Shown one piece after another: positions 599 to 55,996 of a DNA stretch of 64,000 bases. Position 1 is the first letter of the stretch. Every line of letters begins with the position of its first letter. The translations under genes and the position numbers were made by a program. The notes beneath the pieces are model-generated. The model saw only the letters and a list, made by a program, of their open reading frames with translations, was not told the origin of the DNA and ran no database searches. The stretch is from the IMG/VR virus record IMGVR_UViG_3300027896_005002, positions 352,030 to 416,029 of that record, one strand, 5' to 3'.

Positions 599-3500
599 CT
601 AAACTACTCGCTCAATTTGATAATACAATAAATTATTAACTGTGTTTGTTACTGAATTAGCTCTATTCGTAGTAAACATTATTTTTACCAAATTAGGCTT
701 ATTTGATTCAATCATTACAGCAGATTCATCAACAATTGTCTGTATTAATTCATCTATCTCAGTTACAAGATCTGAAAATACTACTTCCTCAGGAATTTCA
801 ATATGTGTTGTAATCGTTAATGTTGTTCCATAAAAATTATCTTGAATCCCTGATGTTAAAATTGTTTCATTTCTTGATTCAATATAATTTGAATAACCTG
901 TTTCCTCAGTTAATGGAAATTTCCGTTCAATAAATGGTTCAAATTGCCATTCTACATCTACAAAAGATTCACATATATGTGCATGTAAATCTTCAGGAAT
1001 ATTATAACTAATTATTGTACTAGCATTTGTAATCTGATTCATCAAATACGGTTGTGTCAAATCAAAATGATCACCTTGAACCGTATAAGTATTTAAAAGA
1101 AAATTTAACTGTCTATATATGACGTATTTATTAAATTTATAGATAATTTTTACGATCTCAACAACAGATGGATTGCTATCAAAACAAACTGTTCCTGACA
1201 ATCCATCAACAGAACTAACAGATAACATATTACCTGACTGTGACGTCATCGTTTGCGTTCCAGCACCAATTGTTGTCAATGTAATCGGAAATCCACCTGA
1301 TGTCGCAGATAATTGAATATGTGTTGAATCAATTCTAATTACAAAATATATTACCATTGGCACTAATGGCGCCGGTAATAATGCTGATGTTTCAAATGTT
1401 ACTGTGTCATTATTAAACCAATCTTGATCAATAGTTATTTGCGAATTCAAAAGATTCACAGCTGTTGGAGTAAATTGAATAGAAACAGTAACCTGAATAT
1501 CATTCGGATTATTAGTTATTGTATTTTCACTCCAACTTAAAATTGGCTTATAAAATGTTGTACAACAATGATTTGTACCATTAAACTGAAATGATACATC
1601 TTCAGTTATAATTTGAGCTTGTTTATATTTATCTGCACAATTAGTTCTTACATCATCACTACCTAAAAATTTAAAATCTATTTTTGTTATTTGATCAATA
1701 ATATTCTTTGTTCTTATAGTCTCAAAAAACAAATATCTTAATAAAAAGAAAGTATGGGCAGGTTTTATCAATTTCAGCACATTAGTTGCACTTGTGTTAA
1801 AACTTTGCCAATCGGTAAATTTCTTATTATTTGCGTCAATATCAACAGCAAAAGTAAATTGTCTTGCAATATCATACAAGAAATATTCAGTAATATTTAC
1901 TGATAATGAACTAACAGTATGTTCTAATCCTAAAAACATTGTCAATCCATCAGTAATACTTTCAATTGTTGATCCTTTAAAAAACATTTGCATTAATGTC
2001 AATAATGCTTGTCTATAATCAGAATTTATTGGAAATGCAGGTGATGGCGGCGTCTTCAATAAATAACCCAAATTTTGATACAATAATTCAGTAGATTCCG
2101 ATGTTGATGCATTATAATACATGTCATTATTATAAGATTCTGCTCGTTCTTTTGCTCGAGCTATTTCAGAAGCTATCATTCTAAAATAACCATCAAATAC
2201 TGTCGATTCAGTATCTTTATTATACGTGCTTTCTAAATTATTCAGAATATTGCTAATAATTTCAATTTGATATTTATACCATAAATCTCTTGTCGTTCTT
2301 GACGGTGTAACAATATCTCTGCAAACAAATGAATATGTTTGTGTCGGCATTACATGAGGACCATTTAATCCACTATAAAAATCTTTTGCGTCAATAGCTA
2401 CATTTACTGTAGCTTTATCTTCAAATATTTCATTAGGAGTGATAGCAATCAAATATCCACGACTTCTTGGAATATAAAAGAAATTCTTATTATCGTCAAA
2501 ACTTGCAAGTGATAATACTAATGAATTAACAATTGCAATATTATACAAATTTATTAAATCAATACTTGGTAAATATGCATAATTATCATTCAAAATTGTT
2601 GAACTAAAATATGGCAATGTATTAATATAGTTGTTAACTTTCTTTATAGTTGAAAATTCATCTCTTGTCAAATTCATTGTAGCAATAACAACGCCATCAA
2701 CTATAATTCTCAATAAATATTCATCCAATGTTAAAAATACTTGAGTTGATGACCCAGAATAATCTATTCTTAAGGCGTCTTTTACAACCAATTGATAAGT
2801 AGTATTTGAAATCTTAACTTTTACTGTTCTTATATCAACACCAGATACATCATCATCAATAAAAAACATTACATTTGTTTCTCGAGAAACATCAACTGCT
2901 TTATCACGAGGCCAGCAACCTTTTAAATACGGCGCGCTTGAATCAATCGGTGTCAAATTGATAGTCTTAATATTTGCTAAATTTCCAGCAACATCTTTAG
3001 CATAAATAACAACACTATCAATATCATCAAAATTTGGAATATTTGCTACTGGCCCAATTTGTACCTGTAATGAGTAATACCCACCACCAGGATTAATTGG
3101 GCCAACACCAGTATAATTAAAGAATGACGAATTTTTAACAGTTGAATATTCGATGTCATCAACAAATATTTTAACTGAATTAACATCAATTCCAGAACAA
3201 GTACTATCTGTTGATGATAATGGATCATAAAGATTTATTGTTAAATATGTATATAATGTAAAATCTAAATCAGCAGGAACAACTGATGTCACTATAGGTT
3301 TTATTACATCCAAATAAAAAAAGCGCTCAACTGGTGTAGTTGCTACAATATAATTTGTCTTTATTTCAGTCGCAGAATATGATCCTTTTGTAGCTGTCAA
3401 AGTAACAGTATATACTCCGGCAGTATTATAAACATGAATAGGATGTTGTAAACTACTATGTGGCGTTGCATCACCAAAATTCCAATTCCAGCTAGTTGGA

Positions 3501-14400: not shown

Positions 14401-15483
14401 TATATTTGTTACCTGAAATTGTGTAAATGTAGAGTTTGTAATTGTGCCAGCATCAACATTTGTTATAGAGCCTGTTTGAACAGATTGTACTGGAGCAGTT
14501 ACTTCATATCGTTGTGTAGCTTCATTAAAATATTGATCAATTGAAGATATCAACATTTTAGCTTCAGCCAATGTTTGAAAATTTATGGCAGGCACTGTTG
14601 ATGTTGCTGTCGTTGACACAATAGTATTTAACGGTACAGTTATTGTTGCTGTTGGTTTTATTATAGTATAAAAAACAACTTCACCTATAGATCCAGTTGC
14701 AGGCTCTCTAAATGTTTGACTATTTGCTGCAAGTTTGTCAAAAGAAAAATCAATCAAACTTTGTACATCTGCATCTACAGTTAAATGTAATGCTGCCTTT
14801 AACTGTTGTTTATATACAGAATTTGATACACTGATTGATGATCCAGTATTATTAGGATCATCAATATTTAACAACGTTAGAAAAGATTGTGACCTCAAAA
14901 GAAAATCAATATAAATGTATAAATCACCATAATTAGCAGCATGTGGATCAATATGAATGTCTCTAGTCATTGTACCAGGTTTAACATCAAGATCAGGATA
15001 TCTATCAAGCATTCGACCAATCATTGTTTGAGCTACATCACTTGTAGATCTAACAGGAAAATCAACAATACTTGATGTTATTATTATTGGTACATCGCTT
15101 ATTTCAATAGAAAATAAACTTTCTTCATTACCATTATTAACAGCAGTAATTACATAATATTGTCGTCTATTATCAACAAGCCCGCTATGAGTATAAGCAT
15201 AAATTGATATATTTTGAAAGTCTTCAACTGTTGTTGTAGTTTTTACACCACCTATTACTTGTACTGTAGTTGTAGAATCAATCACTTTTTGAACAACACT
15301 ATTCACAACTGTAATTAATTCATTATTTAATTTAGCATATCCACTAACACCACCACCAGAAGTAGTGGCATTATAAATATTATAACCTTTAATATCAGTT
15401 TCAGGATTGGCATCCCATTTTATGATGACTGCATTTCCTGATGATTCTGTAAATAGACCGGTAGGCTGTGAAGGTCTAGACAT
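11452..15483 (-). CDS. Baseplate J-like (T4 gp6-type) wedge protein with N-terminal FN3 and inserted modules
   Basis: LDVKPGTMTRDI, REPATGSIGEVVFY and GSDSESNSNLAFRA are baseplate J motifs. N-terminal FN3-like PSQPTGL..IIKWDAN.ETDIKGYNIY. Start moved to the ATG at 15483 (SD AAGGA). Confidence 0.85.
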   Translation of the reverse strand: MSRPSQPTGLFTESSGNAVIIKWDANPETDIKGYNIYNATTSGGGVSGYAKLNNELITVVNSVVQKVIDSTTTVQVIGGVKTTTTVEDFQNISIYAYTHSGLVDNRRQYYVITAVNNGNEESLFSIEISDVPIIITSSIVDFPVRSTSDVAQTMIGRMLDRYPDLDVKPGTMTRDIHIDPHAANYGDLYIYIDFLLRSQSFLTLLNIDDPNNTGSSISVSNSVYKQQLKAALHLTVDADVQSLIDFSFDKLAANSQTFREPATGSIGEVVFYTIIKPTATITVPLNTIVSTTATSTVPAINFQTLAEAKMLISSIDQYFNEATQRYEVTAPVQSVQTGSITNVDAGTITNSTFTQFQVTNIRPTQEGSDSESNSNLAFRAMLAFTGLDIGTLDGYLRTTIGVQYVQDVLVVDAGHPLMQRDYDIVRKQHAYGKVDIYFKGFSEISYTDTFGFVYNGVIDETVVVVVASLPVQWRIQVINPDVSIDDPVYLIQMIENITKSKLYDLTGNFTIKRNAVILPKDQYSMDLITGEMTFDTPLSFGDQIVADYDYKVAITNETVIVLDPQTIQTINNPVALFSEIIYGSRTNNFVVGNLTTSNTIVSISTGLQTVITNDLNLMFSVDEVIELKYDDTHKMQGAVTSYDVMTGILVVNVTSTAGSGSFNPWTISTVGFPVSVITITTGERHIFRTGDKVLVSSPSGILPAPLVADIGYYVICSRLTETGTRQLKLATTIENALAGVAIGFVDAGFGSLVITPDTKVTLVKDLDYTIDYSTGIVTINSALTTQRFYNTFIAVGDMLTADYKYVTTVLNEVVIASASGGEITALLSHDNVVEAILIEADGKTININTHNAINSTIGLLSTDIVRMTYRYRKSPPIIFSNQPVDTIVSIVTANGTVLQEGSGYTFNKVDDILIEGNSVRSQRSVTLLYNPSTGMPEGQLYDFSENVVLAGLDYKSLNKKGIDEHTIVVTDLTQTITYELNNDYLILSAETPFNYVQIARSNTSSISTGQTVIVSYKYGEQMTATYTVNSLIKTIQDKINVSRHVTADVLVKAANQIDVDLEFNVKLATGANTPVVKDQLSTKLFTIFDQKKMGDRISQSDVVAVIDDSADVDYVSLPMTTMKISDGVHIANEVIPNSINWFIYQVGNAIVYKTLAGILRYKTLGSSSDISKFWRVTKDNVDLTLVATPDDVKTFANQAYISSDGSIYLSVNYQQEVVAATDINIVNNTILVSQVWETGTKVQFISTGSLPDPLLPLTDYYVIFLNNIYIRIASSLANAQSGIAIPFINQGTGNHTIVSQISSSVTNFNVTVAYNVHGESGANDIIVSDLDYLNLKSLIINII

Positions 15484-16267
15484 GAAATGTCCTTTCAACT
15501 ATTTTATTTCTAATTTTTCTTGTTATAATCAATGTCTTAATAATTTTAGATAATTTTTTTCCTTTTTTTGATTCACCAATTTTTCTTTTTGTTTCTTCAG
15601 ATAATTTTTTTCCTTTTCTTGACTCACTAATTTTTTTCCTAGCTTCTTCAGACATTTTTTTACCTTTTTTTGATTCACTAATTTTTCTTCTAGTTTCATC
15701 AGAACATGGTCTATTATAAAAATTAGGATTGTTTTTTCTTGTTTCATTCATTTTTCTTTTCACTTCATCTGAAAGATGTTTACCAAATAAATAATGATTT
15801 TCACCTTTATTTGATTCACTTATTTTCTTTCTAGTCTTTTTTGAATGATGCTTGCCAAACATTGGATGATTTTTACCTGACTTTATTTCACTTAATTTCT
15901 TTTTATGCTCTTCAGTAAATTTCCTACCCTTTGATGCTATACTTAATTTTTTTCTAGTTTCTTCTGATATTATTTTACCCTTACCACCTTCATTTAAGTT
16001 ATAACCTTTTTGTGGATTCATAGTATTATGCATTTTTATAAAATACTGTTCAGCTTTATCTAAAGTAGAGTTGTCTAAAGTATTACATTTTATACTCCAC
16101 TCAAATTTATCAAACCCATACTTTCTAAGAGCTCTATGAAAATAAAGATCATCATTTTTCATAGCATCTTTAAAATGTTGAATCCTTCGTTTTTCTAAAG
16201 TTCTAGTAGTCTGACCAAAATAAAGTTTTCCGTTTATTTTATTTTTAACTTGATAAATTATAGACAT
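15476..16267 (-). mobile_element. Free-standing GIY-YIG homing endonuclease with NUMOD3 repeats
   Basis: IIYQVKNKINGKLYFGQT..LEKRRIQH, E..FI, GYNLNEGG and repeated SEETRKKISES motifs; Lys-rich composition unlike its neighbours. Confidence 0.9.
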
Positions 16268-17763
16268 TAATTTCCTTGAAAGAGCGGCTTGTTAAACATT
16301 AGTGATGTGTCCAACTGAATAGCTGTCGCAGCTTGAGATACAACAGTAGCATCTATATCATAAAAATCTGGATCAATATCACTCTGTTCAACAATAATAT
16401 TACTAAGAAAACTAAAAAATTCTTCATCATCAACTTGTTGATACTGTGTCTGTTGTGTTTGTAAATCTTTCATCTTCTCACCAGCATCAATAATCTCACC
16501 TTTAAATTTCGGTATATAATATTCCGATGGCTTAGCTGTACCAATATAAGATATTAATGATGTTCCATACCATGGATGTGCTGTATTTGTTCCTTTTATT
16601 GCTGTTACAAGTTTCAATAAATCTTGCAACATTTTTTGCTCTTTAACCACTGTAATTACATCATGTAACTTATCATAATCATAATCATTAACTTGACCAG
16701 TTCTTCTACATTTTCTGCATTTTAATATTGTGACTTGATAATCTAATGATATTATATCTGTCGGCACATTTTCATCTCTATAATTATATGAAATTGTCAC
16801 AGTATCAGTTATTTTTGGTACAAATCCTAAATTAATTTCACCTGTTATTGCATCCATATTAACTGGAGTAATACGTTGTCCATTAACTAATACAGCTACT
16901 TGAGTTATCATTGTTGCATTTGGATCTGTTCTTATTTTTGCTTTTGGTGGAATTATAGGTTTATGTTGTGTATAAAAATAATTTTCAATACCAGTAAATT
17001 GATTTGACACATCTTCATCCTGAATCAAAAATTGATTTGTTTGTTTTTGTTGATCAAAAATAATCTTACTTACACCAAATGTGTTATCAAATGTTAATTG
17101 CCACCCATCCTTAAATAATGGATAATAAAATATTGCAACAGTTTGATTCGTTGGAATAACCTCTTTAATTGTTATTCTACCTGTTGTTGCGTCAACATTC
17201 TTAACATGCGCCCTATATATATAAGATACAGTCACAATTGCACCAGCAACCGGCGCATTTTTTAATATTATTTTACCAAATATAGGTTCAATAGAATCAA
17301 TATCTACAATAACAGAATTAACTTTGACTGTAATATCATTTTTTGTTAGTTGTGTTGCATATATGTCATATTTTGACATTAAAGGTCTATGTTGTGTCAC
17401 TAAAAGTGTATCTATACCTGTAAACTGAGCTGAAGCATCTTCATCAGTAATAGTTACTTGTACAATTACATCATAAGGTCTTGATGCCAATATTTTTCTA
17501 TTTGAACCATCATAAATTGGTATTTTAGATGCTACATAAATAGTATTTGATCCTGTAATTTGTGATGTTACATCTTCTGTAAATAAAAGTTCTGTTGTGT
17601 TATTTCTATTTAAAGGCACACCATCAACTCTAACAATCATACTATCAGGATTTGCAACAATAGAACTAATTGTCACTGTTTTGAAATCAGTATCTTCAAC
17701 ACAGTATTCATCCTCAGATACTTTATGATCACAATATCGTAAAAGTTTTGTATCAAATGACAT
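16267..17763 (-). CDS. Baseplate gp25-like (sheath initiator) protein with three inserted EDVSxQ modules
   Basis: C-terminal KMLQDLLKLV...GTNTAHPWYGTSL matches the gp25/GPW pattern; adjacent to the J-like gene. Confidence 0.75.
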   Translation of the reverse strand: MSFDTKLLRYCDHKVSEDEYCVEDTDFKTVTISSIVANPDSMIVRVDGVPLNRNNTTELLFTEDVTSQITGSNTIYVASKIPIYDGSNRKILASRPYDVIVQVTITDEDASAQFTGIDTLLVTQHRPLMSKYDIYATQLTKNDITVKVNSVIVDIDSIEPIFGKIILKNAPVAGAIVTVSYIYRAHVKNVDATTGRITIKEVIPTNQTVAIFYYPLFKDGWQLTFDNTFGVSKIIFDQQKQTNQFLIQDEDVSNQFTGIENYFYTQHKPIIPPKAKIRTDPNATMITQVAVLVNGQRITPVNMDAITGEINLGFVPKITDTVTISYNYRDENVPTDIISLDYQVTILKCRKCRRTGQVNDYDYDKLHDVITVVKEQKMLQDLLKLVTAIKGTNTAHPWYGTSLISYIGTAKPSEYYIPKFKGEIIDAGEKMKDLQTQQTQYQQVDDEEFFSFLSNIIVEQSDIDPDFYDIDATVVSQAATAIQLDTSLMFNKPLFQGN

Positions 17764-18227
17764 TAGGTCACAATCCCTTCTGTCTTTAAATACCTATGTT
17801 TATTGTCAAACAATGAATTAATTGTTTCGATATTAGTTCTAAAATCTGACTTAGTAATCCGTAACAAATGAATTCTTTCTTGCAATTGTTCTATTTTATC
17901 AAGAATTTTTCTATTTCGATGTTCAATATTATCTCTTACTTTAATATTTGAATAAAAAGGTTCTTTTATTCTCTGTACTAAAATAGCAGAATCAATGTCA
18001 TCAACTTGTGTAGGTACTACTCTAAAAAAAGATTTTTCAAAAGTTTTAAACTTAACATTCATACGATTGGAATAATCTGATAAATCAGATAATGTTTTCT
18101 GTAACTGGCCTATCTCAAAAATCATATGATTAATTTGTGCATCTACACTATCAAGTTGACTTTGCAGATACGTACGTAAAGATTCAAGTTCTTGTTTTGA
18201 AAATATTCCCAAAAAATCAAATGCCAT
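17763..18227 (-). CDS. Hypothetical coiled-coil protein (baseplate region)
   Basis: 154-aa helical ORF whose stop overlaps the start of the gp25-like gene (TAATG). Confidence 0.6.
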   Translation of the reverse strand: MAFDFLGIFSKQELESLRTYLQSQLDSVDAQINHMIFEIGQLQKTLSDLSDYSNRMNVKFKTFEKSFFRVVPTQVDDIDSAILVQRIKEPFYSNIKVRDNIEHRNRKILDKIEQLQERIHLLRITKSDFRTNIETINSLFDNKHRYLKTEGIVT

Positions 18228-18295
18228 GAATGTCTCTTTTCATAATTGTAAGATATTATGATTTTATAAAACGATTATCGATATTGAGAGGATAT

Positions 18296-18332
18296 AAAGA
18301 CATTCTCCCTTAATAGGTCGATGAATGTCTTT
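18296..18332 (-). promoter_or_regulatory. Kink-turn hairpin, copy 1
   Basis: Minus-strand RNA: AAAGACAUUC-AUC-GA-CCU-AUUA-AGG-GA-GAAUGUCUUU, i.e. 10-bp C-stem, 3-nt bulge, tandem G.A/A.G pairs and 3-bp NC-stem. Confidence 0.7.
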
Positions 18333-18363
18333 GAGGGATAAAAGAAGCAAGAATTATAAATTT

Positions 18364-19122
18364 TTAATCGTACATCTCACCTTCTCGATGTTGTGCTAAA
18401 GATTTAAGATCACTAATAAAATAACTGTCAACTTTTGAAATTTCAGGACCCCAGTCACCAGATCTTAGTACTGCTTTTTTATGTTCTTTTGTTGGAATAA
18501 CCATAAGAGTCATACCGTCAGGATCTACACCACCATGTGGTCCCTCACCAACAGAAAATAATTGTTTGGGATATTTCTTCTTCAACTTAATAATTCTATT
18601 TACCATTCTTTTAGGACTAGTATGTGACATATCAAAATCAAAAGTTTTTAAACCTTTTACTAATTTTTGATCAGCATCTTCTAATTCTTTATTTTCTTTT
18701 GTTAAAATACTAACAACAGTATTTTTACTATATTTCTTATATGAAAGTATAATTTCATTTCCATCTTTATTCCATGTTCTGACGCCAATATGGTAATCAG
18801 TTTTAGGTAATTTCTTACTTTTTCCATAATGTTCATTAAATTGTTTAAATAATTCTTTATATTTTCTTTTAGATTTATCTGGAAACGATTCACGTATTGC
18901 ATAATCTCCATCACCTTCAGGCTCATTTTGCAATAATGATTTAATAGATTCAGAATGTTCTTGCGTGTCTTCTCCAGAAACTTCACGTTTTGGTCTCGCA
19001 GTTAACCGTCTTTTACTTTTCCTATGTCTTTTTAAATAAGCCCTTTGTTCATCTAAAGACAAATCATCCCATTTTCTTGCTTCTTTAACAAATTCTGATT
19101 GAATTATAGCCAAATGTTTCAT
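18364..19122 (-). CDS. Hypothetical basic/charged protein
   Basis: 252-aa ORF with a strong AAGGAG SD; contains KWDDLSLDEQRAYLKRHRKSKRR; no recognisable family. Confidence 0.65.
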   Translation of the reverse strand: MKHLAIIQSEFVKEARKWDDLSLDEQRAYLKRHRKSKRRLTARPKREVSGEDTQEHSESIKSLLQNEPEGDGDYAIRESFPDKSKRKYKELFKQFNEHYGKSKKLPKTDYHIGVRTWNKDGNEIILSYKKYSKNTVVSILTKENKELEDADQKLVKGLKTFDFDMSHTSPKRMVNRIIKLKKKYPKQLFSVGEGPHGGVDPDGMTLMVIPTKEHKKAVLRSGDWGPEISKVDSYFISDLKSLAQHREGEMYD

Positions 19123-27953: not shown

Positions 27954-28571
27954 TTAAAATATTTTACCTGTATCAGTCCCAACGCTCGGGATTGGAGGAA
28001 ATGCTGGCGGTACTGGTCCAACTGCAACACCAGTTATTGTCGTGTTTACAATTGCAGTTTGAAAAGCAGCCGCAACTCCATATCCTATTCCATTTGCTAA
28101 TTGAAAATTTTTTGTTCCTACTAAACCTACAGCAACCATTTGAGCTAATATAATTGATGCCATCATCGGTCCTATTATACCAACAATTATTCCTGTACCA
28201 GTTCCAATACCTACTATAGTTGATACACCTTGAACTATAGCTGTTGTCATGTGAGAAGCCACTGCATTTCCAATTGCCATTGACATTGGTTGCATTTTAC
28301 TGCCTATCAACCCTTGTGCAGTACATTGCAAAAAAATCAAATTTCCAACAGTTGATCCTATAATTATTCCACCAGATAATGTACCAATTGATGCACCTGT
28401 TCCCAATCCCAATCCAGTTGACACCCCATTATATATTGCAGTTGACAATACATTAGTTACAATTCCATTTCCAATAGCCATTGACAATTGTGGCACCATT
28501 GTTCCTGTAAATCCTATAGAAGCAAGTTGTGCCTGGATTTGAGCTCCAAGCAATGATCCATTAATTGGCAT
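27954..28571 (-). CDS. Gly/Ala-rich protein with an internal 3-fold repeat; candidate spike-tip protein
   Basis: Three repeats of I.AQ....G..G.....L..AIG.GV; first structural gene after the spike. Confidence 0.45.
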   Translation of the reverse strand: MPINGSLLGAQIQAQLASIGFTGTMVPQLSMAIGNGIVTNVLSTAIYNGVSTGLGLGTGASIGTLSGGIIIGSTVGNLIFLQCTAQGLIGSKMQPMSMAIGNAVASHMTTAIVQGVSTIVGIGTGTGIIVGIIGPMMASIILAQMVAVGLVGTKNFQLANGIGYGVAAAFQTAIVNTTITGVAVGPVPPAFPPIPSVGTDTGKIF

Positions 28572-29964
28572 GATTAATTACATTTCTGTTTTTATGTCGT
28601 AATTTAGTATAAAAACCTTCTTGTTTTATCTGTACATTATTTTCATATAATATTTTTTTCACTCTTTTTTTAAGAACATTATATTTATAACATATTTGTC
28701 TAATCGACGTATTATTCTGATAATCTATCAGAATATTTTTTTTAATATCATCAGTAATAATTGTCAAATTATGATCTTTATTAACTTTATCTAAATGTTT
28801 ACCATAATTTTCATTATATTTTTCAATTTGTTTTTTCTTTCTATCATCCTTAGCATCTTCTGGCAAAATTTTATTAAGATCTTCTCGTTTTATTTTATAT
28901 TTTTTATCAAGTTTATGTAAACTACAATTTGTACGATATTCACTAATAATGTCATTAATACAATATGACATTACAAACTGACGAAATTTTTCAATATCAT
29001 TTAAATAATCTTTTATCCATAAATGATATATTTGATCAATAATTCTATATGTTGTATTATATTTTTCTGCAAGTTTTGTTAAATTCAATCTATTAATTAT
29101 ACAATCTTTAATTATTATTATTTTGTCTTTTTCATATATTTCAATAAATTTTTTTAATGATATATCTTTAGTATAATCTAATTCATAAAAATCAAGTCTA
29201 ATATTTAATTTTTTGTCAATATCAAGTATATCAAACACATTCAATTTGTTTTTATCATAAATTTCAAATTGTTCATTAGGATATAATTTTTTAATAATTT
29301 GCATTTTTTGTTGATCTGATTTTTTAAAATATCCTTTTACTTCAACAAAAATATTATCGTCAATTAAATAAAAATCAGGACAATAAGTATGATCTATATT
29401 ATTTATTTGATAAGTAAATTGTCTTACATGTTCATGACAATAGAATCTTTTATTTTGTTGTATTAACCATAAACCAAATTTAAATTCCCATGATCCTTGA
29501 TATGTTTTTCCTTCATAAAAGTACCATCGACATTGACCAGCTCCCACTGATGGAGCTTTACCAAAATTCGGATGATTTTTGCCAACACCTAATCCTAATT
29601 TTATTTGTTCTTGTCTAGCTTCATTACAAGTTTTCAATTTAATATTAGCGTGTTTAAGTATAATACTTATAGTTTTTCTACTTAAATTATATTTTCTTTC
29701 AAGTGATCTTAAATTATTGCCAGACTTTTGATATTCATTAACAATGTTTTTGCCAATATCTGATTCAAAAATTTTTTTATTTTTTTGTATTAAAAATGAA
29801 CGTTTAATTTGAATATTATTATATTGTAATAGATCTTTAATTACTGATCTACTTACATTATATTTTTTAGAAATTTTTCTTATTGGTAAACCATTTTTGT
29901 ATTCTTTAATTAAATTTAAACCTTCATCTGTTGTTGATAATTCTCTAATTTTTTGAATTGACAT
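28561..29964 (-). mobile_element. Free-standing PD-(D/E)XK homing endonuclease with multiple HTH-like repeats
   Basis: YQGSWEFKF...HTYCPDFYL..NIFVEVKGY catalytic motif; repeated Y..G..IR.I..KYN.SR helix-turn-helix units; K/I/N-rich insert between structural genes. Confidence 0.75.
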
Positions 29965-34656: not shown

Positions 34657-35377
34657 TTGTTTGTCCTGTTGGTATGTTGACTATATCAAGAGTTGATCTA
34701 TCATTTCTAATAGCACCTGGTGTTGGAACAGTTGTAACATTAGTAAATGATAAAACTCTACCGGGATAAACTTCTTTTGTTACTTTGAATGTAAAATCAT
34801 ATTCAAGTTGATATGGTTTTTCTGCAATTTCATTAAGATTAAAACTATCAAAATATCCTCTATACACGGCATCGTCATAATTCATTACTACATAGCCTTG
34901 AGCAAGTATACGATTAGTTTTAGAATCATACAATGTTCCATTATTTCTATAAATCTGTACAAATTGTTCAAACGATTTAAAATTATCTGTGTCTCTACGA
35001 CCATCACTTGTTAATCCTAATTGACCGTAAAAACTTGCAGATTGTCCAGATGCTGATAATGAATCTAATTGTTCACCCCAATGTTCTTCAACAAAACCAG
35101 CCCAAGTTCTTTTATGATTAATTAATTGACTGTATTGTTCAGATAAATTATGTGGATTAATTTTCATTGTCAAATCTGGTAATGTATAACTACTTGGTAA
35201 TCCACCAATTTGCCAAATAATTAATTTTTTATTTCTAACTGTACCTTGTCTTACTTGACTAGGAATAGGAATACCTGAATATTGATCAAGATTCCTATTA
35301 AGTCTGATATCAGTTTCACTAATAGTATTTATCGTGTTTTGTAATCCAAAAATTGCATCACTTGTACTTATACCCAT
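34649..35377 (-). CDS. Tail tube initiator-like protein (paralogue 1)
   Basis: Aligns to the neighbour: GLTSDGRRDT/GLTTDGRKDT, IYRNNG in both, YDDAVYRGYF/YDDVIYRGSF. Confidence 0.65.
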   Translation of the reverse strand: MGISTSDAIFGLQNTINTISETDIRLNRNLDQYSGIPIPSQVRQGTVRNKKLIIWQIGGLPSSYTLPDLTMKINPHNLSEQYSQLINHKRTWAGFVEEHWGEQLDSLSASGQSASFYGQLGLTSDGRRDTDNFKSFEQFVQIYRNNGTLYDSKTNRILAQGYVVMNYDDAVYRGYFDSFNLNEIAEKPYQLEYDFTFKVTKEVYPGRVLSFTNVTTVPTPGAIRNDRSTLDIVNIPTGQTNG

Positions 35378-38034
35378 TAAGCACCTACCGTTTTCTCATC
35401 ATACAAAACTCTATAGATTATTTGCTCAATTTCTTGTCTGTCGCGCTGATTAATATTAAGTGTAATATGATTTGTTATTGCTGGCCTTGTATCTACAGCC
35501 TTGGCAACACCACCGCCTCCTTTAAGCATAGACATTAATGTATTTAAATTATTAATGCCAGCTTTTTGTGTTGCATCTTTATCAAAAACATACTCATTTT
35601 TATGAACTGCACCTGCAATATCATTATCAGATCCTGTACCAGTATATCCACCACGTGCATAACCTGCACCTTTTACTACTGGTGTATTTGGACGAGCAGC
35701 AGCAGCCATTCCCTCTGATGCAGCTAATTCTCGACCAGTCATTGTACTTCTATTAACTTCTATTGTTTTAATATCGACAGGCTTTTGCTTCTTTTCAAGT
35801 CCAAAAAATTTTGTAAGATTTTCAATTGCTTCAGCAGCAGATGCTAATAAAGGACCCATTGTGTTTGTCAACCAATCATAAATTTGTTCTATTACTTGCC
35901 AAATTTTTTCTTGTATAGATGTTAATGCAGCTCTTGTACCCATTTCAATTATATGAGCTTGTTCTTTTTCCTTTTTTCTTAATTCCTTAGCTTGTTCTGC
36001 ACCAATTTGTGTTCCAATACCTTCAAATTTTTTACCACTTTTAGAAAATTGCTCTATTAATCGTAATACTCCAGGTGATATTCCTATTGTTGGCATCAAT
36101 TTATTAAGTTCAAATCTATGTGATTCAATTGCTTCTCCAAGTTTATCAGGAATAATTTTGCCAAATTTATCTATAGTTCCACTTAAAAGACCACCGCTTG
36201 CTTTAATCATTGCTTTAACTTGTGCTTCAATTCGCGGTCCCACATCCATTTTCTCAAATTCATTTAATAATGTAGATGCAGATTTTCCAATAGCACCATT
36301 TGTACTCAATTGCATAACTAAAACTTTTTGAGTATCAGTCATTGTGTTAACACTATTTAACATTTCAGTTGCAAGTTGTTCAGCTTGTTTTTGCGGCATC
36401 TTAAGACCCTTTGTCAAGTCTCTAAATGAAGCAGAAACTTGAGTTATATCATTGCCATATATAGCTAAACCTTGAGCAGCATTCATGACATTTGAATAAA
36501 ATCTTGATGTTGTTATGCCTGCTTCTTTAGCATCATTTTTCATTATAACAAAAGTATCAGTAATTTGTTGACCCGTTTTCTTAAATTCATTTCTAAGATC
36601 ACCAGCTTCAGATGCAACCTCTTCAAAAGATTGACCGGTTATTGTACCAATTTGTTCAATATCTGCCATAAATTCTTTAAAATTATGTCTTGCAGTTTTT
36701 TGTGTAATATCAAGTGCAAAACCAGCTTTAGTTAATGCTTCAACATTTTTTACTGCATCTTCATATGTCATTCCAACTTCATTATAAAGACCTCTTAATG
36801 ATTCTCTAAATGCATTAGCTTGACCAACTGCACCTTTATCAATTGCATCTCCCAATTTGCCAAATCCTATAGACCCTGATGCTGCTAATTTTAAAATATT
36901 CTTCTGTGCAGTTTTAATCTCTTTATTAAAATTCAACAACATCATAATAGCAGTTGCAATTCCACCCAATGCCATTAATGGTCCCGCAAGCTTTCCTGCT
37001 ACAGTCATTAATTCACCACCCACATATCCTGCAGCTCCTGCTCCTGGACCACCACCAGCAACAACACCAGCTGCAACTCCTCTACCAGCGCTTTTAACAG
37101 CTTGTCGTTTTTCTTCCTTCAATATTTTTTTACGTTCAAAAAATCCAATACCTTGTTGTTTAAGTAATAATCCATGTAACTTTATTTCATTAAGTTGATC
37201 TTTTAGATCTTCTTTCTTCATCTTTCTAGTTTTCTTGTATAAATCAAATTGCTTTTTCTCAAATTTTGATTGCTTTTCATTAAGCGGTAGCATCTGCTTT
37301 GCTCGTTTTAATCTCTCTTTTTCAGTTAATTCTGGATGAGTTTTTTGCATTTCTTCAGCTAATTTTTCTTGCATTGCTTTGCGCTGTTTTATAATATCAT
37401 TCATCTCAGTATTTAATTCATTTAATCTATCACTAGATCTTTCCTCTTCTTGTGAAACATCCAAAGCAGACTTATCCAGATCTTTTATATCACTTTTAAT
37501 TTTTAATTTACTTTTATTTAATTGTGATAATTTATCCTCTAATTCATTACTGCGTTTTTTCAATTTATTTTCATTTTCAATATCAGTTGTTAATTTCTTA
37601 TTTAAAACACCTTCTAATTTTTTAATTTTTAATGCATCTTCATCAGAATCTGTCCCATTTTCTTTAAGCTCCTGTATCTTCTGTTGAATCTTAATTAATT
37701 CATCTTCTGTTGCTTTTCTAGTTTCTATAGCTTTATTAGTATCAACTTCCAACATTTTATTTTCAATATTCAATTTTTTAATCTGATCTACAACCAACTT
37801 ATGTTTACCTTTGGTTTTAGTAATATTGTCAGCAATGGCACTCTGCTTATCTAATATAGTCGAATGTTCTTTCTGTAATTTCAATAAATCTTTTTGAGTT
37901 TTCATCCATTTTGGATCAATCTCTACAGAACGTAACCCTTCAGTTATTTGTTTACTCAATTCCTGCATTTTTTGTTTGTCAATTTTACCAAAATTGACAT
38001 CAACAGTCATTGATGCATCACTGTTCCGTGCCAT
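35377..38034 (-). CDS. Tape measure protein
   Basis: Long coiled coil, a hydrophobic Gly/Ala stretch and the C-terminal GYARGGYTG....AGAVHKNEYV motif; canonical position after chaperones. Confidence 0.85.
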   Translation of the reverse strand: MARNSDASMTVDVNFGKIDKQKMQELSKQITEGLRSVEIDPKWMKTQKDLLKLQKEHSTILDKQSAIADNITKTKGKHKLVVDQIKKLNIENKMLEVDTNKAIETRKATEDELIKIQQKIQELKENGTDSDEDALKIKKLEGVLNKKLTTDIENENKLKKRSNELEDKLSQLNKSKLKIKSDIKDLDKSALDVSQEEERSSDRLNELNTEMNDIIKQRKAMQEKLAEEMQKTHPELTEKERLKRAKQMLPLNEKQSKFEKKQFDLYKKTRKMKKEDLKDQLNEIKLHGLLLKQQGIGFFERKKILKEEKRQAVKSAGRGVAAGVVAGGGPGAGAAGYVGGELMTVAGKLAGPLMALGGIATAIMMLLNFNKEIKTAQKNILKLAASGSIGFGKLGDAIDKGAVGQANAFRESLRGLYNEVGMTYEDAVKNVEALTKAGFALDITQKTARHNFKEFMADIEQIGTITGQSFEEVASEAGDLRNEFKKTGQQITDTFVIMKNDAKEAGITTSRFYSNVMNAAQGLAIYGNDITQVSASFRDLTKGLKMPQKQAEQLATEMLNSVNTMTDTQKVLVMQLSTNGAIGKSASTLLNEFEKMDVGPRIEAQVKAMIKASGGLLSGTIDKFGKIIPDKLGEAIESHRFELNKLMPTIGISPGVLRLIEQFSKSGKKFEGIGTQIGAEQAKELRKKEKEQAHIIEMGTRAALTSIQEKIWQVIEQIYDWLTNTMGPLLASAAEAIENLTKFFGLEKKQKPVDIKTIEVNRSTMTGRELAASEGMAAAARPNTPVVKGAGYARGGYTGTGSDNDIAGAVHKNEYVFDKDATQKAGINNLNTLMSMLKGGGGVAKAVDTRPAITNHITLNINQRDRQEIEQIIYRVLYDEKTVGA

Positions 38035-38431
38035 CTACAATCTCCGTTTGTTCAGTTCCTAATTTTTTGTCAATACTACTTTTAATCTTACCATCTAAGA
38101 TACAATATTCATTAAATAGCATTTCTACTAATTCATCACCAAAAGATAAAACAATTTGCCTCTTATCGTCAACAAATGATTTCGGATCTAATTTTACATC
38201 ATTTATAGCAATAATAGATCTTGCTATTGTTTCAACTTTTAATGTATGAGTAGCAGCATCAGCATCATTATATTTTGCACAACTTTCAAAAACATCTATT
38301 GTTTCTTGTGAGGTTAATGGTGCCAGTAATATTTTTACTTTGGCTATTTCTACTTGTCTTTCACTATAACCAAAAGATTCTAATGACTTTAATGCAGTTA
38401 ATGCATCTACAACTTTTTTAATTTGATTCAT
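38018..38431 (-). CDS. Tail assembly chaperone-like protein (paralogue 3)
   Basis: Likely start is the ATG at 38431 (SD AAGGA); LAPLTSQE...KVETIARSIIAIND motif. Confidence 0.65.
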   Translation of the reverse strand: MNQIKKVVDALTALKSLESFGYSERQVEIAKVKILLAPLTSQETIDVFESCAKYNDADAATHTLKVETIARSIIAINDVKLDPKSFVDDKRQIVLSFGDELVEMLFNEYCILDGKIKSSIDKKLGTEQTEIVDGTEQ

Positions 38432-38888
38432 TTGAATTTTCCTTTTTTTGTTCTTCTTTTTTAATCTGTTCTTCTTTTTTAATTTGATCTTCTTTATATC
38501 CAACAACATTTGTTTCTGCAGTCAATTTTATTTTTTCAAAATATTCATCAATATCACCAACCAATTTTGCATATTCTCTATACACATAATCAACCAATGT
38601 TTGTTGCCACTGTCCTATAACTGATTTTTTAATATTTATATCAATAGTTTCAGTCGACATTCCATTAATTTGCGTTATTGATCTACTTAATGTTTCAATC
38701 TTATGTTTATAGACAAATGCCTGTCCCCACGTATTCATACATTCAATAAAAGTAGCAGTTTCATCTTCTGCACCTAATGACTTTATTACTACTTCAAACT
38801 CATCACCAATTGTTACAGTTGCAGTCCGTTTTTCCAGTTCAGCTACAGCATTTAATGCATCTAAAGCACTATCAAACTTTTTTACCAT
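38418..38888 (-). CDS. Tail assembly chaperone-like protein (paralogue 2)
   Basis: Likely start is the ATG at 38888 (SD GGAGG); IKSLGAEDE...KIETLSRSITQING motif. Confidence 0.65.
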   Translation of the reverse strand: MVKKFDSALDALNAVAELEKRTATVTIGDEFEVVIKSLGAEDETATFIECMNTWGQAFVYKHKIETLSRSITQINGMSTETIDINIKKSVIGQWQQTLVDYVYREYAKLVGDIDEYFEKIKLTAETNVVGYKEDQIKKEEQIKKEEQKKENSNESN

Positions 38889-40286: not shown

Positions 40287-40304
40287 GAGAAAAGAGAGGA
40301 ATTG

Positions 40305-40340
40305 AGGGCATTCTCCTCATTTAGAGTCAATGAATGCCCT
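40305..40340 (-). promoter_or_regulatory. Kink-turn hairpin, copy 2
   Basis: Minus-strand RNA: AGGGCAUUC-AUU-GA-CUC-UAAAU-GAG-GA-GAAUGCCCU, followed by a pyrimidine tract; 20 nt after the tube stop codon. Confidence 0.7.
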
Positions 40341-40360
40341 TGGAGGTTTCAAATATAAAT

Positions 40361-40999
40361 TTATGCCAACGATATCAATTTACTGATAGTAGTAGGATCA
40401 CGATCAACAAGTGTATCACCATAAGCACCGCGACCAGCAGCAGGATCATAAACATCAGTAATGTTTACTGCACAATCCTGCATAATCGTTGATGCACCAA
40501 TTTCAAATGTAATATTATAATCTTGCATCCAGCAACCTTCATAATAAGTCTGAATAATATTACCTGTCAGTCCACCTGTTTTACTTGTTCCTCTTTGTAC
40601 TGTATAGGATCCTGTGCCAATGAAATCAGGAACAATAATTTGTTCCTTAATATCAAAAGGCCAACGATGATGTTTCAATGACCGAATAATTCCTGAAGCA
40701 CCAGCATTATAACCAAGAACCTGCATAATATTTACAAGATACATTACAGCAATACTTAAAGAACCAGTTAAATCAGTGACACCAACTGATTGTTCAGCTG
40801 TTCTATCACCATGACCGATTCCTCTTACGGGTTCTGTCGGTCTTGATTGTGCCGGCGCCCAAGATTGTAGTAAACCAATTTGGTTTGCTGTAGGATCAGC
40901 TCCACCTGGATGAGCAGTAAATACTTTTACTTTTTGACTATTAAGTAAACTAGTATTTGGAGTAGATCCTTGTTGATAAATATAACTATTAGTAGCCAT
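40361..40999 (-). CDS. Tail tube protein
   Basis: IGLLQSW...SRPTEPVRGIG, GSLSI and YYEGCWMQDYNITF motifs; downstream of the sheath; strong GGAGG SD. Confidence 0.85.
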   Translation of the reverse strand: MATNSYIYQQGSTPNTSLLNSQKVKVFTAHPGGADPTANQIGLLQSWAPAQSRPTEPVRGIGHGDRTAEQSVGVTDLTGSLSIAVMYLVNIMQVLGYNAGASGIIRSLKHHRWPFDIKEQIIVPDFIGTGSYTVQRGTSKTGGLTGNIIQTYYEGCWMQDYNITFEIGASTIMQDCAVNITDVYDPAAGRGAYGDTLVDRDPTTISKLISLA

Positions 41000-48274: not shown

Positions 48275-48326
48275 CTTGACCTTCCTTTTTAATTGTTTAA
48301 TTTTCATTTGTTTCATAAAATCTCCT

Positions 48327-52473: not shown

Positions 52474-52959
52474 TTATTCTTTCAAAAAGTTTTCAATGAT
52501 TGGAAATAATTCATCTGCTGTATTAAAAGCATTAACATTTTGTTTTGTGTTAGTCCAAACATCAAATTGATTAACTCTCAAAAATGATTTTGATTTCAAA
52601 ATATTTTTATTATATGAATATCCAAAAATATTTGGATCAGACAATCCAAAAATAGCTATTCCTGGAGTTACCAAGCTCATACAATTGCACATATGAGGTA
52701 AAAAATTATCAACACTTATCCAAGAATAACAATCAGATAACTTTTGTTGCAACTTTTCAAATGATAACCCGTACATTACGTCATCTACATTTTGTAAAAC
52801 TTGTTCACCAAATGTACCAATCTGAATTAATTTGTAATTTAATGTTTTAAGTAATGGTATTAGTTGTATCCAATATGGATACGACTTTGGATGTGTAGGT
52901 GTAAAACTATAAGGACTAATAATAATAAAATCACCAACCTTTTTAGTTCTAATATTCAT
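52474..52959 (-). CDS. GT9 (heptosyltransferase-like) C-terminal Rossmann half
   Basis: IIISPY...KSYPYW..LI, WISVDNFLPHM and GIAIFG.SDP..FGY motifs. Confidence 0.7.
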   Translation of the reverse strand: MNIRTKKVGDFIIISPYSFTPTHPKSYPYWIQLIPLLKTLNYKLIQIGTFGEQVLQNVDDVMYGLSFEKLQQKLSDCYSWISVDNFLPHMCNCMSLVTPGIAIFGLSDPNIFGYSYNKNILKSKSFLRVNQFDVWTNTKQNVNAFNTADELFPIIENFLKE

Positions 52960-55267: not shown

Positions 55268-55277
55268 AAACCACTCC

Positions 55278-55925: not shown

Positions 55926-55996
55926 GTTTCTTTTTGTTCAATTTTCTAATATCAAATATTCATATTCATATTTATTTGCATTAATTTTACTTTACT

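What the first reader, a model, noticed from the sequence alone, without database searches (positions are those of the whole stretch)
18296..18332. Repeated kink-turn RNA element with compensatory base changes (copy 1)
Two intergenic hairpins 22 kb apart share the architecture stem-CAUUC / AUY bulge / GA / 3 bp / loop / 3 bp / GA / GAAUG-stem (seen). This matches the established K-turn consensus. The stems differ in sequence but keep pairing (AAAGAC:GUCUUU vs AGGGC:GCCCU; CCU:AGG vs CUC:GAG). Both are preceded by CCUC and followed 4-5 nt later by CCUCUC. K-turns are bound by L7Ae (archaea) or YbxF/YlxQ (bacteria). I know of no described K-turn-based control of virion gene operons, so this may be a viral system using a host L7Ae-family protein to set structural protein stoichiometry (inference).
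Basis: partly seen in the sequence, partly recalled or inferred. Interest (0 to 1): 0.85.

Follow-up and report, generated by a model that had tools for sequence, protein, structure and literature searches.

The report
Kink-turn RNA hairpin in jumbo phage
A small, strongly conserved RNA hairpin with the classic protein-binding "kink-turn" shape sits at two gene boundaries in the tail-gene block of a 416-kb bacterial virus and its relatives. It is an RNA family not described before, and its job, probably marking transcript ends or controlling neighbouring genes through a bound protein, is untested.

Summary
Two hairpins on the transcribed (-) strand, at 18296-18332 and 40305-40340, share a standard K-turn core: C-G closing pair, AUY bulge, tandem G.A/A.G, then a Watson-Crick stem. 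The stems differ but still pair.

The window is the tail module of a 416-kb jumbo myovirus with a bacterial host. I found 18 further members in related uncultured phages, always at one of two places. One is 15-28 nt after the tail-tube gene. The other is about 30-100 nt before a conserved 154-aa gene.

The K-turn nucleotides are invariant in 20/20 sequences, apart from a one-base insertion in one member. Both stems covary (9 of 13 pairs compensatory).

Eleven members add a covarying pseudoknot between the hairpin loop and an upstream hexamer. Both window copies lack it.

There is no Rfam match, no literature precedent, and no copy in 185,579 cellular genomes with the pattern tried.

3b:3n is always C:G. 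By published rules such K-turns do not fold without a protein or a tertiary contact.

Function is inferred. The best reading is a protein-clamped boundary element (terminator or transcript-end barrier). No L7Ae gene was found in the 158 kb of the genome that I could read.

The parts
18296..18332 (-). K-turn hairpin copy 1. C-stem 18323-18332 pairs with 18296-18305. Bulge AUC 18320-18322. Tandem G.A/A.G at 18318-18319 with 18306-18307. NC stem 18315-18317 pairs with 18308-18310. Loop 18311-18314.
   Evidence: Sequence read. Pattern match. Covariance models score it 51.2 and 53.4 bits.
18333..18337 (-). 5' flank CCCUC directly before the stem. A C/U-rich 5' flank is found in all 9 simple-class copies.
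18286..18291 (-). 3' flank CCUCUC, 4 nt after the stem.
   Evidence: Similar CUCC or CCUC tracts occur in 8 of 9 simple-class copies.
40305..40340 (-). K-turn hairpin copy 2. C-stem 40332-40340 pairs with 40305-40313. Bulge AUU 40329-40331. G.A/A.G at 40327-40328 with 40314-40315. NC stem 40324-40326 pairs with 40316-40318. Loop 40319-40323.
   Evidence: Scores 52.7 bits. The orthologous hairpin is present in all 7 close relatives.
40342..40346 (-). 5' flank CCUCC of copy 2.
40294..40299 (-). 3' flank CCUCUC of copy 2, 5 nt after the stem.
40361..40999 (-). 212-aa tail-tube-like virion protein gene. Copy 2 begins 20 nt after its stop codon.
   Evidence: It follows the sheath gene 41391-44162 (PHROG tail sheath, Pfam Phage_sheath_1C). 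It has a weak PHROG virion structural hit. It is 37% identical to a 'virion structural protein' of Tunturiibacter phage Tunturi_5.
38872..40251 (-). 459-aa gene downstream of copy 2. The real start is at 40251 and it has no Shine-Dalgarno sequence.
18364..19122 (-). 252-aa orphan ORF upstream of copy 1. It is absent at this place in the five closest relatives.
17763..18227 (-). 154-aa gene (N-terminus MAFDFLG) downstream of copy 1. It is the conserved neighbour of all pseudoknot-class members.
18226..18234 (-). GACAUUCAU, a repeat of the hairpin's 5' strand (18321-18329). It overlaps the AUG of the 154-aa gene and is a possible alternative partner for the hairpin's 3' strand.
   Evidence: Read directly. 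Seen only in this copy. Its significance is unknown.

Best explanation
WHAT IT IS (well supported)
- It is a member of an undescribed family of about 40-nt RNA hairpins transcribed with the tail genes of a low-GC clade of jumbo myoviruses.
- Each hairpin carries a standard K-turn between a 7-10 bp outer stem and a 3-5 bp apical stem.

HOW IT MOST LIKELY WORKS (inferred)
- The hairpin forms in the long late transcript at two fixed gene boundaries.
- Its 3b:3n pair is always C:G, so the kink is not stable on its own. It is clamped by a K-turn-binding protein. This could be a host L7Ae-family protein of the YbxF/YlxQ type or an unidentified phage protein.
- In the pseudoknot variants the loop-to-upstream pairing may hold the kink instead.
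- The clamped hairpin acts as a boundary element: an intrinsic-terminator-like stop and/or a barrier to 3' exonucleases.
- This uncouples the amount of the upstream message (the abundant tube protein) from the genes behind it.
- The phage carries its own sigma-like and NusG-family proteins, so host RNA polymerase and regulated termination are probably in play.
For: Structure and conservation:
- 20 sequences are 92.6% paired, against 78.0% when shuffled. 9 of 13 pairs show double-sided changes. The covariation score is 0.486 against 0.212. Slid controls give 42-57% paired.
- RNAalifold finds the same fold on an alignment that was not fitted to a model.
- The K-turn positions -2b U, -1b C, L1 A, L2 U, 1b G, 2b A, 3b C, 3n G, 1n A, -1n G and -2n A are 20/20. 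2n G is 19/20 as aligned. L3 varies.
- G.U pairs and the G.A tandem fit only the coding strand.

Need for a ligand:
- K-turns with 3b,3n = C.G do not fold in Mg2+ alone, like the protein-bound U4 K-turn (PMC5061560).

Boundary role:
- The tube-position copy always begins 15-28 nt after the stop codon, while the distance to the next gene varies from 52 to more than 130 nt.
- In 6 of 7 relatives a GC-rich stem is followed by 6-8 U in 9 nt.
- Distant relatives have a plain 13-bp hairpin at the same place.
- Only two copies exist in 158 kb of this genome, both in the tail module.

Transcription context:
- A sigma70_r2 protein and a NusG/LoaP/UpxY-like protein are encoded elsewhere in the genome.
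Against: - The two window copies have weak U-tracts (5 and 4 U in 9 nt) and fail a simple terminator scan.
- The pseudoknot-class copies have AU-rich stems and near-background U content.
- At the 154-aa-gene position the distance to the downstream start codon is the more constant one. This suggests a 5'-UTR role instead.
- No L7Ae-family gene was found in 38% of the genome, and the host phylum is unknown.
- No transcript data exist.
- The conserved C/U-rich flanks remain unexplained.
Confidence: 0.4

Rival explanations
1. It is a 5'-UTR operator for the downstream gene. The K-turn, with or without the pseudoknot, binds a repressor or activator, or acts as a 5' stabiliser. It would control translation or stability of the 154-aa and 459-aa genes, as L7Ae does on its own mRNA in archaea or gp32 does on its leader pseudoknot in T4.
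For: - At the 154-aa-gene site the element lies 30-54 nt before the AUG in 10 of 12 members.
- Several downstream genes lack a Shine-Dalgarno sequence. Relatives without the element have a strong GGAGG there.
- In the window, the hairpin's 5'-strand 9-mer is repeated at the AUG. This allows an alternative pairing that would mask the start.
Against: - At the tube site the distance to the next start varies from 52 to more than 130 nt, too far for direct occlusion.
- Presence of a Shine-Dalgarno sequence varies among pseudoknot-class members.
- The 9-mer repeat occurs in one genome only.
Confidence: 0.2
2. It is a stand-alone small RNA, or the 5'-terminal module of its own transcript, made from a phage-specific promoter just upstream. 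It could act, for example, as a decoy that titrates a K-turn-binding host protein.
For: - In pseudoknot-class loci the motif TCTAnnnTTTTTAT occurs twice on the coding strand. One copy lies 20-28 nt before the pseudoknot and one 15-33 nt before the gene start.
- A relative without the element has one copy of the motif.
- Tube-site copies in relatives end in U-tracts, as small RNAs do.
Against: - The motif has not been shown to be a promoter.
- Only 15-28 nt separate the tube stop codon from the hairpin, and no conserved motif lies there.
- There is no expression evidence.
Confidence: 0.15
3. It is a recruitment or target site for the phage's NusG-family paralogue, giving processive antitermination or regulated termination. 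This would be analogous to LoaP and its small leader hairpin, or to lambda N and boxB.
For: - The genome encodes a 172-aa NGN+KOW protein. It scores alike against NusG, LoaP and UpxY (71, 66.9 and 66.6 bits). It lies next to a sigma70_r2 protein.
- LoaP binds a small RNA hairpin to bypass terminators in long operons (PMC12691694).
- The window is a gene array of at least 64 kb on one strand.
Against: - The hairpins are internal, not in a leader.
- LoaP's hairpin is a UNCG tetraloop without a K-turn.
- No co-occurrence data exist for the relatives.
- All three scores fall below the family cut-offs.
Confidence: 0.12
4. It is an ordinary terminator or stabiliser hairpin. The internal loop merely resembles a K-turn and no dedicated protein is involved.
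For: - Tube-site relatives show a terminator-like layout of A-tract, GC stem and U-tract.
- Plain hairpins occupy the same site in distant relatives.
Against: - Eleven loop and closing positions are invariant across 20 sequences, while both stems and the apical loop change freely. A plain terminator would not be expected to show this.
- The pseudoknot variant needs the kink geometrically.
Confidence: 0.08
5. It is a DNA-level signal, such as a promoter, a recombination or homing site, or a cruciform, rather than an RNA.
For: - The 252-aa ORF plus copy 1 differs from the closest relatives at that site.
- Homing endonuclease genes lie nearby.
Against: - G.U pairs (for example the U.G in CCUU/GAGG of most pseudoknot-class members) and the G.A tandem make sense on one strand only.
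- The opposite strand scores only 14-16 bits.
- Apical stem and loop lengths vary, which breaks any fixed spacing.
- There is no sigma-70-type promoter match.
Confidence: 0.03

Closest known systems
U4 snRNA 5' stem-loop K-turn (bound by 15.5K/Snu13) and other protein-dependent simple K-turns
   Same: - A hairpin with a C-G closing pair, a 3-nt bulge and tandem G.A/A.G.
- A Watson-Crick 3b:3n pair, so folding is expected to need a protein (PMC5061560).
   Different: - This one is bacteriophage mRNA or intergenic RNA, not a spliceosomal RNA.
- 3b:3n is C:G rather than G:C.
- The ligand is unknown.
Archaeal L7Ae binding to K-turns in mRNA 5' UTRs, including its own (PMC5539422)
   Same: A K-turn hairpin inside a messenger acts as a protein-binding regulatory site.
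   Different: - The host here is bacterial.
- The element is not next to a ribosome-binding site at the tube position.
- No L7Ae gene was found in the part of the genome that I read.
OLE RNA K-turn recognised by OapC, a YbxF-family protein in Bacillota (PMC9723947), and YbxF/YlxQ generally
   Same: This is a bacterial precedent for an L7Ae-family protein recognising a specific K-turn. It is the most plausible kind of host ligand if the host is a Bacillota member.
   Different: - OLE is a 600-nt non-coding RNA, whereas this is a 37-45 nt hairpin in phage late transcripts.
- The host phylum rests only on a weak hint.
SAM-I riboswitch P2 K-turn that enables a loop pseudoknot
   Same: In the pseudoknot-class relatives the K-turn lets the apical loop pair with a distal strand. 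That is the architectural use K-turns have in riboswitches.
   Different: - SAM-I K-turns almost never have C:G at 3b:3n (0.1%).
- Here there are too few conserved unpaired nucleotides for a ligand pocket.
- The window copies have no pseudoknot.
Intrinsic terminators and intercistronic stabiliser hairpins after major structural genes
   Same: - The position is right after the tube gene.
- Most tube-site relatives have an A-tract, a GC-rich stem and a U-tract.
   Different: - The apex is an invariant K-turn module.
- The window copies lack a good U-tract.
LoaP (NusG paralogue) with its leader RNA hairpin, and lambda N with boxB
   Same: - A small conserved RNA hairpin sits in a very long operon.
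- The genome encodes a NusG-family paralogue.
   Different: - Those hairpins have no K-turn and lie in leaders.
- No link between the phage NusG-like protein and this hairpin has been shown.

Membership tests
Standard (simple) kink-turn motif | A three-nucleotide bulge followed on the same strand by G then A. These form tandem trans sugar-Hoogsteen G.A and A.G pairs with a GA on the opposite strand. | tested here: met
   The sequence requirement is met in 20/20 members. The bulge is A-U-N. 1b G, 2b A and 1n A are invariant. 2n G is 19/20 as aligned, and the one exception has a one-base insertion. The definition is taken from PMC5061560.
Standard (simple) kink-turn motif | A canonical (C) helix ending in a Watson-Crick pair, usually C-G, at -1b:-1n. 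| tested here: met
   C:G is 20/20 and U:A at -2 is 20/20. The five pairs beyond them (-3 to -7) covary.
Standard (simple) kink-turn motif | A non-canonical (NC) helix continuing beyond the G.A pairs. | tested here: met
   The stem is 3-5 bp and its length varies. 3b:3n is C:G in 20/20, and the next two pairs covary.
Standard (simple) kink-turn motif | The kinked three-dimensional geometry with its A-minor contacts. | not testable with these tools
   This needs FRET, gel mobility, crystallography or chemical probing.
L7Ae/YbxF/YlxQ-bound regulatory K-turn | Direct binding by an L7Ae-family protein. | not testable with these tools
   There is only an indirect argument: 3b:3n = C:G K-turns need a protein or a tertiary contact to fold.
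L7Ae/YbxF/YlxQ-bound regulatory K-turn | An L7Ae-family gene (PF01248) is available in the virus or its host. | tested here: inconclusive
   - None among 30 window ORFs scanned against Pfam.
- None among the precomputed Pfam hits for record positions 257,419-366,918.
- 62% of the genome and ORFs under 100 aa in the window were not examined.
- The host is bacterial but its phylum is unknown. There is a weak Bacillota hint.
Intrinsic (Rho-independent) terminator | A GC-rich stem followed immediately by a U-rich tract. | tested here: inconclusive
   - The window copies give no terminator call. They have 5 and 4 U in the 9 nt after the last G-C pair.
- Tube-site relatives have 6-8 U in 6 of 7 cases.
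- Pseudoknot-class members have 3-6 U.
Any Rfam 15 family (including box C/D, L10 leader, T-box, riboswitches, small ribozymes) | A score at or above the family's gathering threshold. | tested here: not met
   - No hit in the whole window at gathering thresholds.
- Only chance-level hits at E of 0.7 or more around copy 1.
- None around a pseudoknot-class member.
Box C/D sRNA | C box RUGAUGA and D box CUGA, with guide regions and C'/D' boxes. | tested here: not met
   The strands read UCAUYGA and GGAGA. The whole element is 37-45 nt with no guide region.
K-turn-mediated pseudoknot fold (as in SAM-I) | The apical loop of the NC stem pairs with a distal strand. | tested here: not met
   - Not met for the two window copies. 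Their loops are 4-5 nt and have no partner.
- Met in 11 relatives. The pairings seen are GACUAC:GUAGUC, GACUAU:AUAGUC, AACUAC:GUAGUU, AGCUAC:GUAGCU and GGCUA:UAGCC.
- The pseudoknot helix is 95.5% paired.

The most novel reading that the evidence does not exclude
The hairpins are recognition sites of a phage-specific ribonucleoprotein switch. A dedicated K-turn reader re-programmes host RNA polymerase termination, or transcript fate, at defined boundaries inside the tail operon of at least 64 kb. The pseudoknotted relatives would be a self-folding version of the same switch. This would be the first natural K-turn-dependent gene-control system in a virus of bacteria.
Probability: 0.15. Interest if true: 0.85.

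Novelty: new variant of a known kind. Interest (0 to 1): 0.62.

Why it matters
K-turns are among the best-understood RNA-protein recognition modules and are widely used as synthetic switches. Natural regulatory K-turns in messengers are few: archaeal L7Ae, yeast L30 and some riboswitch scaffolds. I found none described for bacteriophages.

This is a covariation-supported family confined to huge phages. It sits at fixed boundaries of the tail-gene array and comes in a simple form and a pseudoknotted form. Three things follow:
- It gives a directly testable entry point into how jumbo phages partition expression within very long late operons.
- It raises the question of which bacterial or phage protein reads K-turns in that setting.
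- It gives RNA structural biologists a natural pair, one version apparently protein-dependent and one stabilised by tertiary contact, for testing the 3b:3n folding rules.

Tried and rejected
1. Rfam. The whole window at gathering thresholds gave nothing. E-value mode around copy 1 and around a pseudoknot-class member gave nothing meaningful.
2. Near-identity search of GenBank phages with 8 kb around copy 1 gave no match. A protein search with the tube protein gave only relatives at 35-37% identity, and 40 kb around the tube gene of one of them holds no K-turn.
Stricter cores recovered only the already known sites. That means 2 in the 416-kb contig and 1 per related contig.
4. GTDB genomes. A protein scan with the 154-aa family found nothing. 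A DNA core pattern gave 78 matches, about the number I estimated for chance, and none was hairpin-like.
5. Sigma-70 promoter and simple terminator scans at both sites found nothing at the elements.
6. Recoding. The frame of the 459-aa ORF has a stop inside hairpin 2, so a tube-459 fusion by frameshift is excluded for that frame.
7. Flank pairing. I found no consistent Watson-Crick partner for the C/U-rich flanks.
8. The 122-aa ORF between the sheath and tube genes as a possible L7Ae-like binder. Its homologues are D/N/E-rich and look disordered, so I did not pursue it.
9. The 252-aa ORF has no family or fold lead.
10. Hunt for a phage L7Ae gene by walking about 95 kb beyond the window found none.
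11. Host identification gave only weak hints. The bacterial-type informational genes found in the walk argue against an archaeal host.

Full report
OBSERVATION

All large ORFs of the window are on the - strand, so I read the element on that strand. Copy 1 is a 37-nt hairpin at 18332-18296. It has a 10-bp outer stem, a 3-nt bulge AUC, GA, a 3-bp inner stem CCU/AGG around the loop AUUA, then GA and the return strand. Copy 2 at 40340-40305 has the same plan with different stem sequences.

The shared core pattern occurs exactly twice in the window and never in 100 shuffles.

CONTEXT

The window is the last 64 kb of a 416,029-bp IMG/VR contig. The same genome was assembled independently as a 415,903-bp ENA contig. 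GC content is 30.8%.

The genes are a myovirus tail module:
- neck or tail-completion protein
- 923-aa sheath
- 212-aa tube-like protein
- a tape-measure-like protein
- tail and baseplate proteins, including a gp6-like wedge subunit
- a tail-fibre-like giant

Copy 2 starts 20 nt after the tube gene's stop codon. Copy 1 lies between a 252-aa orphan ORF and a 154-aa gene (N-terminus MAFDFLG) that precedes the baseplate genes.

CONSERVATION AND COVARIATION

Seven related contigs have tube proteins 80-86% identical. All of them carry a hairpin 15-28 nt after the tube stop codon. It has the same core and different, compensating stems.

On a plain MAFFT alignment of the 9 sequences:
- 93.2% of cells pair, against 79.3% when shuffled.
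- 7 of 13 pairs show double-sided changes.
- Slid controls give 36-55% paired.
- RNAalifold predicts the same structure independently.

A covariance model found only the two copies in the window with filters off (52.7 and 51.2 bits). The next best hit is the opposite strand of the same sites at about 15 bits.

The second site, upstream of the 154-aa gene, behaves differently:
- It is empty in the five closest relatives. These have a short spacer with a strong GGAGG, and no 252-aa ORF.
- It is occupied in a more distant group, where the 154-aa protein is 31-39% identical, in IMG/VR and JGI metagenome contigs.

With all 20 distinct sequences:
- 92.6% of cells pair, against 78.0% when shuffled.
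- 9 of 13 pairs are compensatory.
- The covariation score is 0.486 against 0.212.

ANATOMY

Across the 20 sequences these positions never change: -2b U, -1b C, L1 A, L2 U, 1b G, 2b A, 3b C, 3n G, 1n A, -1n G and -2n A. 2n is G in 19 of 20 as aligned, and the exception (L226) has a one-base insertion. L3 is U, C or A. The apical stem is 3-5 bp and its loop is free to vary.

This is the definition of a standard K-turn: a 3-nt bulge, then G.A and A.G pairs, with a C-G pair at -1 (PMC5061560). The same review states that 3b,3n = C.G K-turns are unfolded in metal ions alone. Such sequences typify protein-bound K-turns (U4) and are almost absent from self-folding riboswitch K-turns (0.1% in SAM-I). 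The invariant C:G here therefore predicts a need for a protein or a tertiary contact. G.U pairs and the G.A tandem place the functional strand on the coding strand.

A PSEUDOKNOTTED VARIANT

In the 11 members upstream of the 154-aa gene in the distant group, the apical loop is longer. It is complementary to a hexamer that starts 19-23 nt 5' of the K-turn core. The pairings change together:
- GACUAC:GUAGUC (5 sequences)
- GGCUAC:GUAGUC
- GACUAU:AUAGUC (2 sequences)
- AACUAC:GUAGUU
- AGCUAC:GUAGCU
- GGCUA:UAGCC

On the MAFFT alignment this helix is 95.5% paired, despite two alignment shifts. Geometrically this is the use K-turns have in riboswitches: the kink brings the loop back towards the base of the outer stem.

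Window copy 1 sits at this same site. Its stems are nearest to members L230 and L224. However, it has a 4-nt loop and no upstream partner, so it looks like a derivative that lost the pseudoknot (inference).

DISTRIBUTION

- Model R2 found no further sites in 527 kb of related loci.
- It found none in a further 95 kb or so of the same genome.
- Strict core patterns find 2 copies in the whole 416-kb contig and one per related contig.
- Relatives with about 35% tube identity and 52-64% GC lack the element. These include a 485-kb GenBank phage. Tunturiibacter phage Tunturi_5 belongs to this wider group by tube-protein similarity (37%), but I did not examine its DNA. Two of the relatives I did examine have a plain 13-bp hairpin after the tube gene.
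- One core pattern gave only about the estimated chance number of matches in 185,579 cellular genomes, and none was hairpin-shaped.
- There is no Rfam family and no paper on natural phage K-turn elements.

CLUES TO FUNCTION

(a) The tube-site copies keep a short, constant distance to the upstream stop codon and a variable one to the next gene. In 6 of 7 relatives a GC-rich stem is followed by 6-8 U in 9 nt, with an A-rich 5' base. This is an intrinsic-terminator layout. The window copies have only 5 and 4 U and are not called by the simple scan.

(b) At the other site the distance to the downstream AUG is the steadier one (30-54 nt in 10 of 12). Shine-Dalgarno sequences are weak or absent in several members.

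(c) In pseudoknot-class loci a motif TCTAnnnTTTTTAT flanks the element on both sides. A relative without the element has one copy. This may be a phage promoter, which is unproven.

(d) In the window only, 9 nt of the hairpin's 5' strand recur at the AUG of the 154-aa gene.

(e) C/U-rich flanks are conserved but have no consistent partner.

HOST AND POSSIBLE LIGANDS

Walking along the same genome showed bacterial-type genes:
- trigger factor
- NAD-dependent DNA ligase
- HU
- DnaB and DnaG
- a split DnaE with an intein
- several tRNA genes

An archaeal host, and hence archaeal L7Ae, is therefore unlikely. A glycosyltransferase's nearest clusters are from Bacillota. This is weak support for a host that would possess YbxF/YlxQ-type proteins.

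No PF01248 protein appears among 30 window ORFs scanned against Pfam, or in the precomputed Pfam hits for the walked region. Together these cover about 158 kb, or 38% of the genome.

The walk did reveal a sigma70_r2 protein adjacent to a 172-aa NusG-family paralogue. It has NGN and KOW domains and scores alike against NusG, LoaP and UpxY, below all three cut-offs. LoaP is known to bind a small leader hairpin to override terminators in long operons (PMC12691694). This is a lead, not evidence.

MOST LIKELY MECHANISM

I commit to a protein-clamped boundary element with a probability of about 0.4. The K-turn hairpin forms in the late tail transcript and is fixed in its kinked form by a K-turn-binding protein. 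In the pseudoknot variants the pairing may fix it instead. The clamped hairpin terminates transcription and/or blocks 3' exonucleases after the tube gene, and again before the baseplate genes. This separates the dosage of neighbouring structural genes.

Shown:
- the fold
- the K-turn consensus
- the fixed positions
- the terminator-like tails in relatives

Inferred:
- protein binding
- the kink itself
- the effect on transcripts

Rivals: a 5'-UTR operator or stabiliser (0.2), a stand-alone small RNA (0.15), a NusG-paralogue site (0.12), a plain terminator (0.08) and a DNA-level signal (0.03).

COMPARISON AND NOVELTY

As a structure it qualifies, on sequence criteria, as a member of the standard K-turn motif. 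Its 3D geometry is untested.

It is not a member of any curated RNA family. It works most like protein-dependent K-turn hairpins (U4, L7Ae-bound mRNA sites, OLE-OapC) grafted onto a terminator or intercistronic hairpin. Its pseudoknotted relatives resemble the SAM-I use of a K-turn.

I rate it a new variant of a known kind. It is a new RNA family in a new biological setting, built on a known motif.

LIMITS

- Only 38% of the genome was inspected for proteins and for further copies.
- The collection-wide pattern scans needed exact cores, so divergent members will have been missed.
- The E-values of the models are rough.
- There are no expression or binding data.

Noticed in passing
window 15476-16267 and 52956-53537 (- strand): Two free-standing GIY-YIG/NUMOD3 homing endonuclease genes. 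The first lies between the 498-aa gene and the baseplate-wedge-like gene. It is absent from relatives L145 and L146, where those two genes are adjacent.
   Followed up: partly
window 18364-19122 (- strand); L012-L018: A 252-aa orphan ORF just upstream of copy 1 is missing at this place in the five closest relatives. Only its basic N-terminal 45 aa or so (an Arg/Lys-rich stretch) recurs, in one or two otherwise different ORFs per related contig. It could be a targeting or nucleic-acid-binding module.
   Followed up: partly
window 18226-18234 versus 18321-18329 (- strand): The 9-mer GACAUUCAU of the hairpin's 5' strand is repeated across the start codon of the 154-aa gene. The hairpin's 3' strand could therefore pair with the start region instead (10 bp with one G.U). 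This is seen only in this genome.
   Followed up: partly
L190, L191, L193, L221, L224, L226, L227, L230 (about 2860 and 2972 in L190): The motif TCTAnnnTTTTTAT occurs twice on the coding strand. One copy lies right after the upstream stop codon and one 15-33 nt before the 154-aa gene's start, bracketing the K-turn and pseudoknot. L192, which has no K-turn, has a single copy. It is a candidate clade-specific promoter.
   Followed up: partly
window 47228-48316 (- strand): An actin-like protein of the Volactin family (Pfam E 8e-81) lies inside the structural region. Atlas neighbours are mostly jumbo-phage and bacterial proteins.
   Followed up: partly
window 38418-38912 and 38018-38509 (- strand): Two ORFs of about 164 aa overlap by 92 nt in different frames, directly upstream of the tape-measure-like gene 35377-38034. 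This is the usual layout of a tail-assembly-chaperone programmed frameshift.
   Followed up: no
window 58959-63803 and on to 64000 (- strand): A 1614-aa ORF with collagen triple-helix repeats. GYSG-type repeats continue to the end of the window.
   Followed up: no
window 53534-58858 (- strand): A cluster of glycosyltransferase and methyltransferase genes (GT2, GT2_5, GT9/GT8, FkbM) and an RCC1-repeat protein lies next to the structural genes. This may serve virion or host-surface glycosylation.
   Followed up: no
window 28561-29964 (- strand): A 467-aa ORF inside the tail module has endonuclease or Holliday-junction-resolvase-like hits and DNA-binding PHROG hits. It may be another mobile nuclease.
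   Followed up: no
L323:13329-14090 and L323:14119-14637 (same genome, record position about 273-274 kb): A sigma70-region-2 protein lies adjacent to a 172-aa NusG-family paralogue (NGN+KOW). The paralogue scores 71, 66.9 and 66.6 bits against NusG, LoaP and UpxY, below all three cut-offs. The phage probably redirects host RNA polymerase and may control termination.
   Followed up: partly
L316-L324 (same genome, record positions 257-352 kb): The phage encodes trigger factor, Cpn10, RtcB, a T4 Rnl1-like RNA ligase, NAD synthase and NAPRTase, NAD-dependent ligase, HU and a DnaE split by an intein. It also encodes tRNA-Phe, tRNA-Ser and two tRNA-Cys. This is a bacterial-type toolkit that argues against an archaeal host.
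   Followed up: partly
L170 and L173, about 3210-3260: Distant high-GC relatives carry a plain 13-bp hairpin, with the same stem and different loops, after the tube gene. It has no U-tract. This suggests that a hairpin at this boundary is older than the K-turn version.
   Followed up: partly
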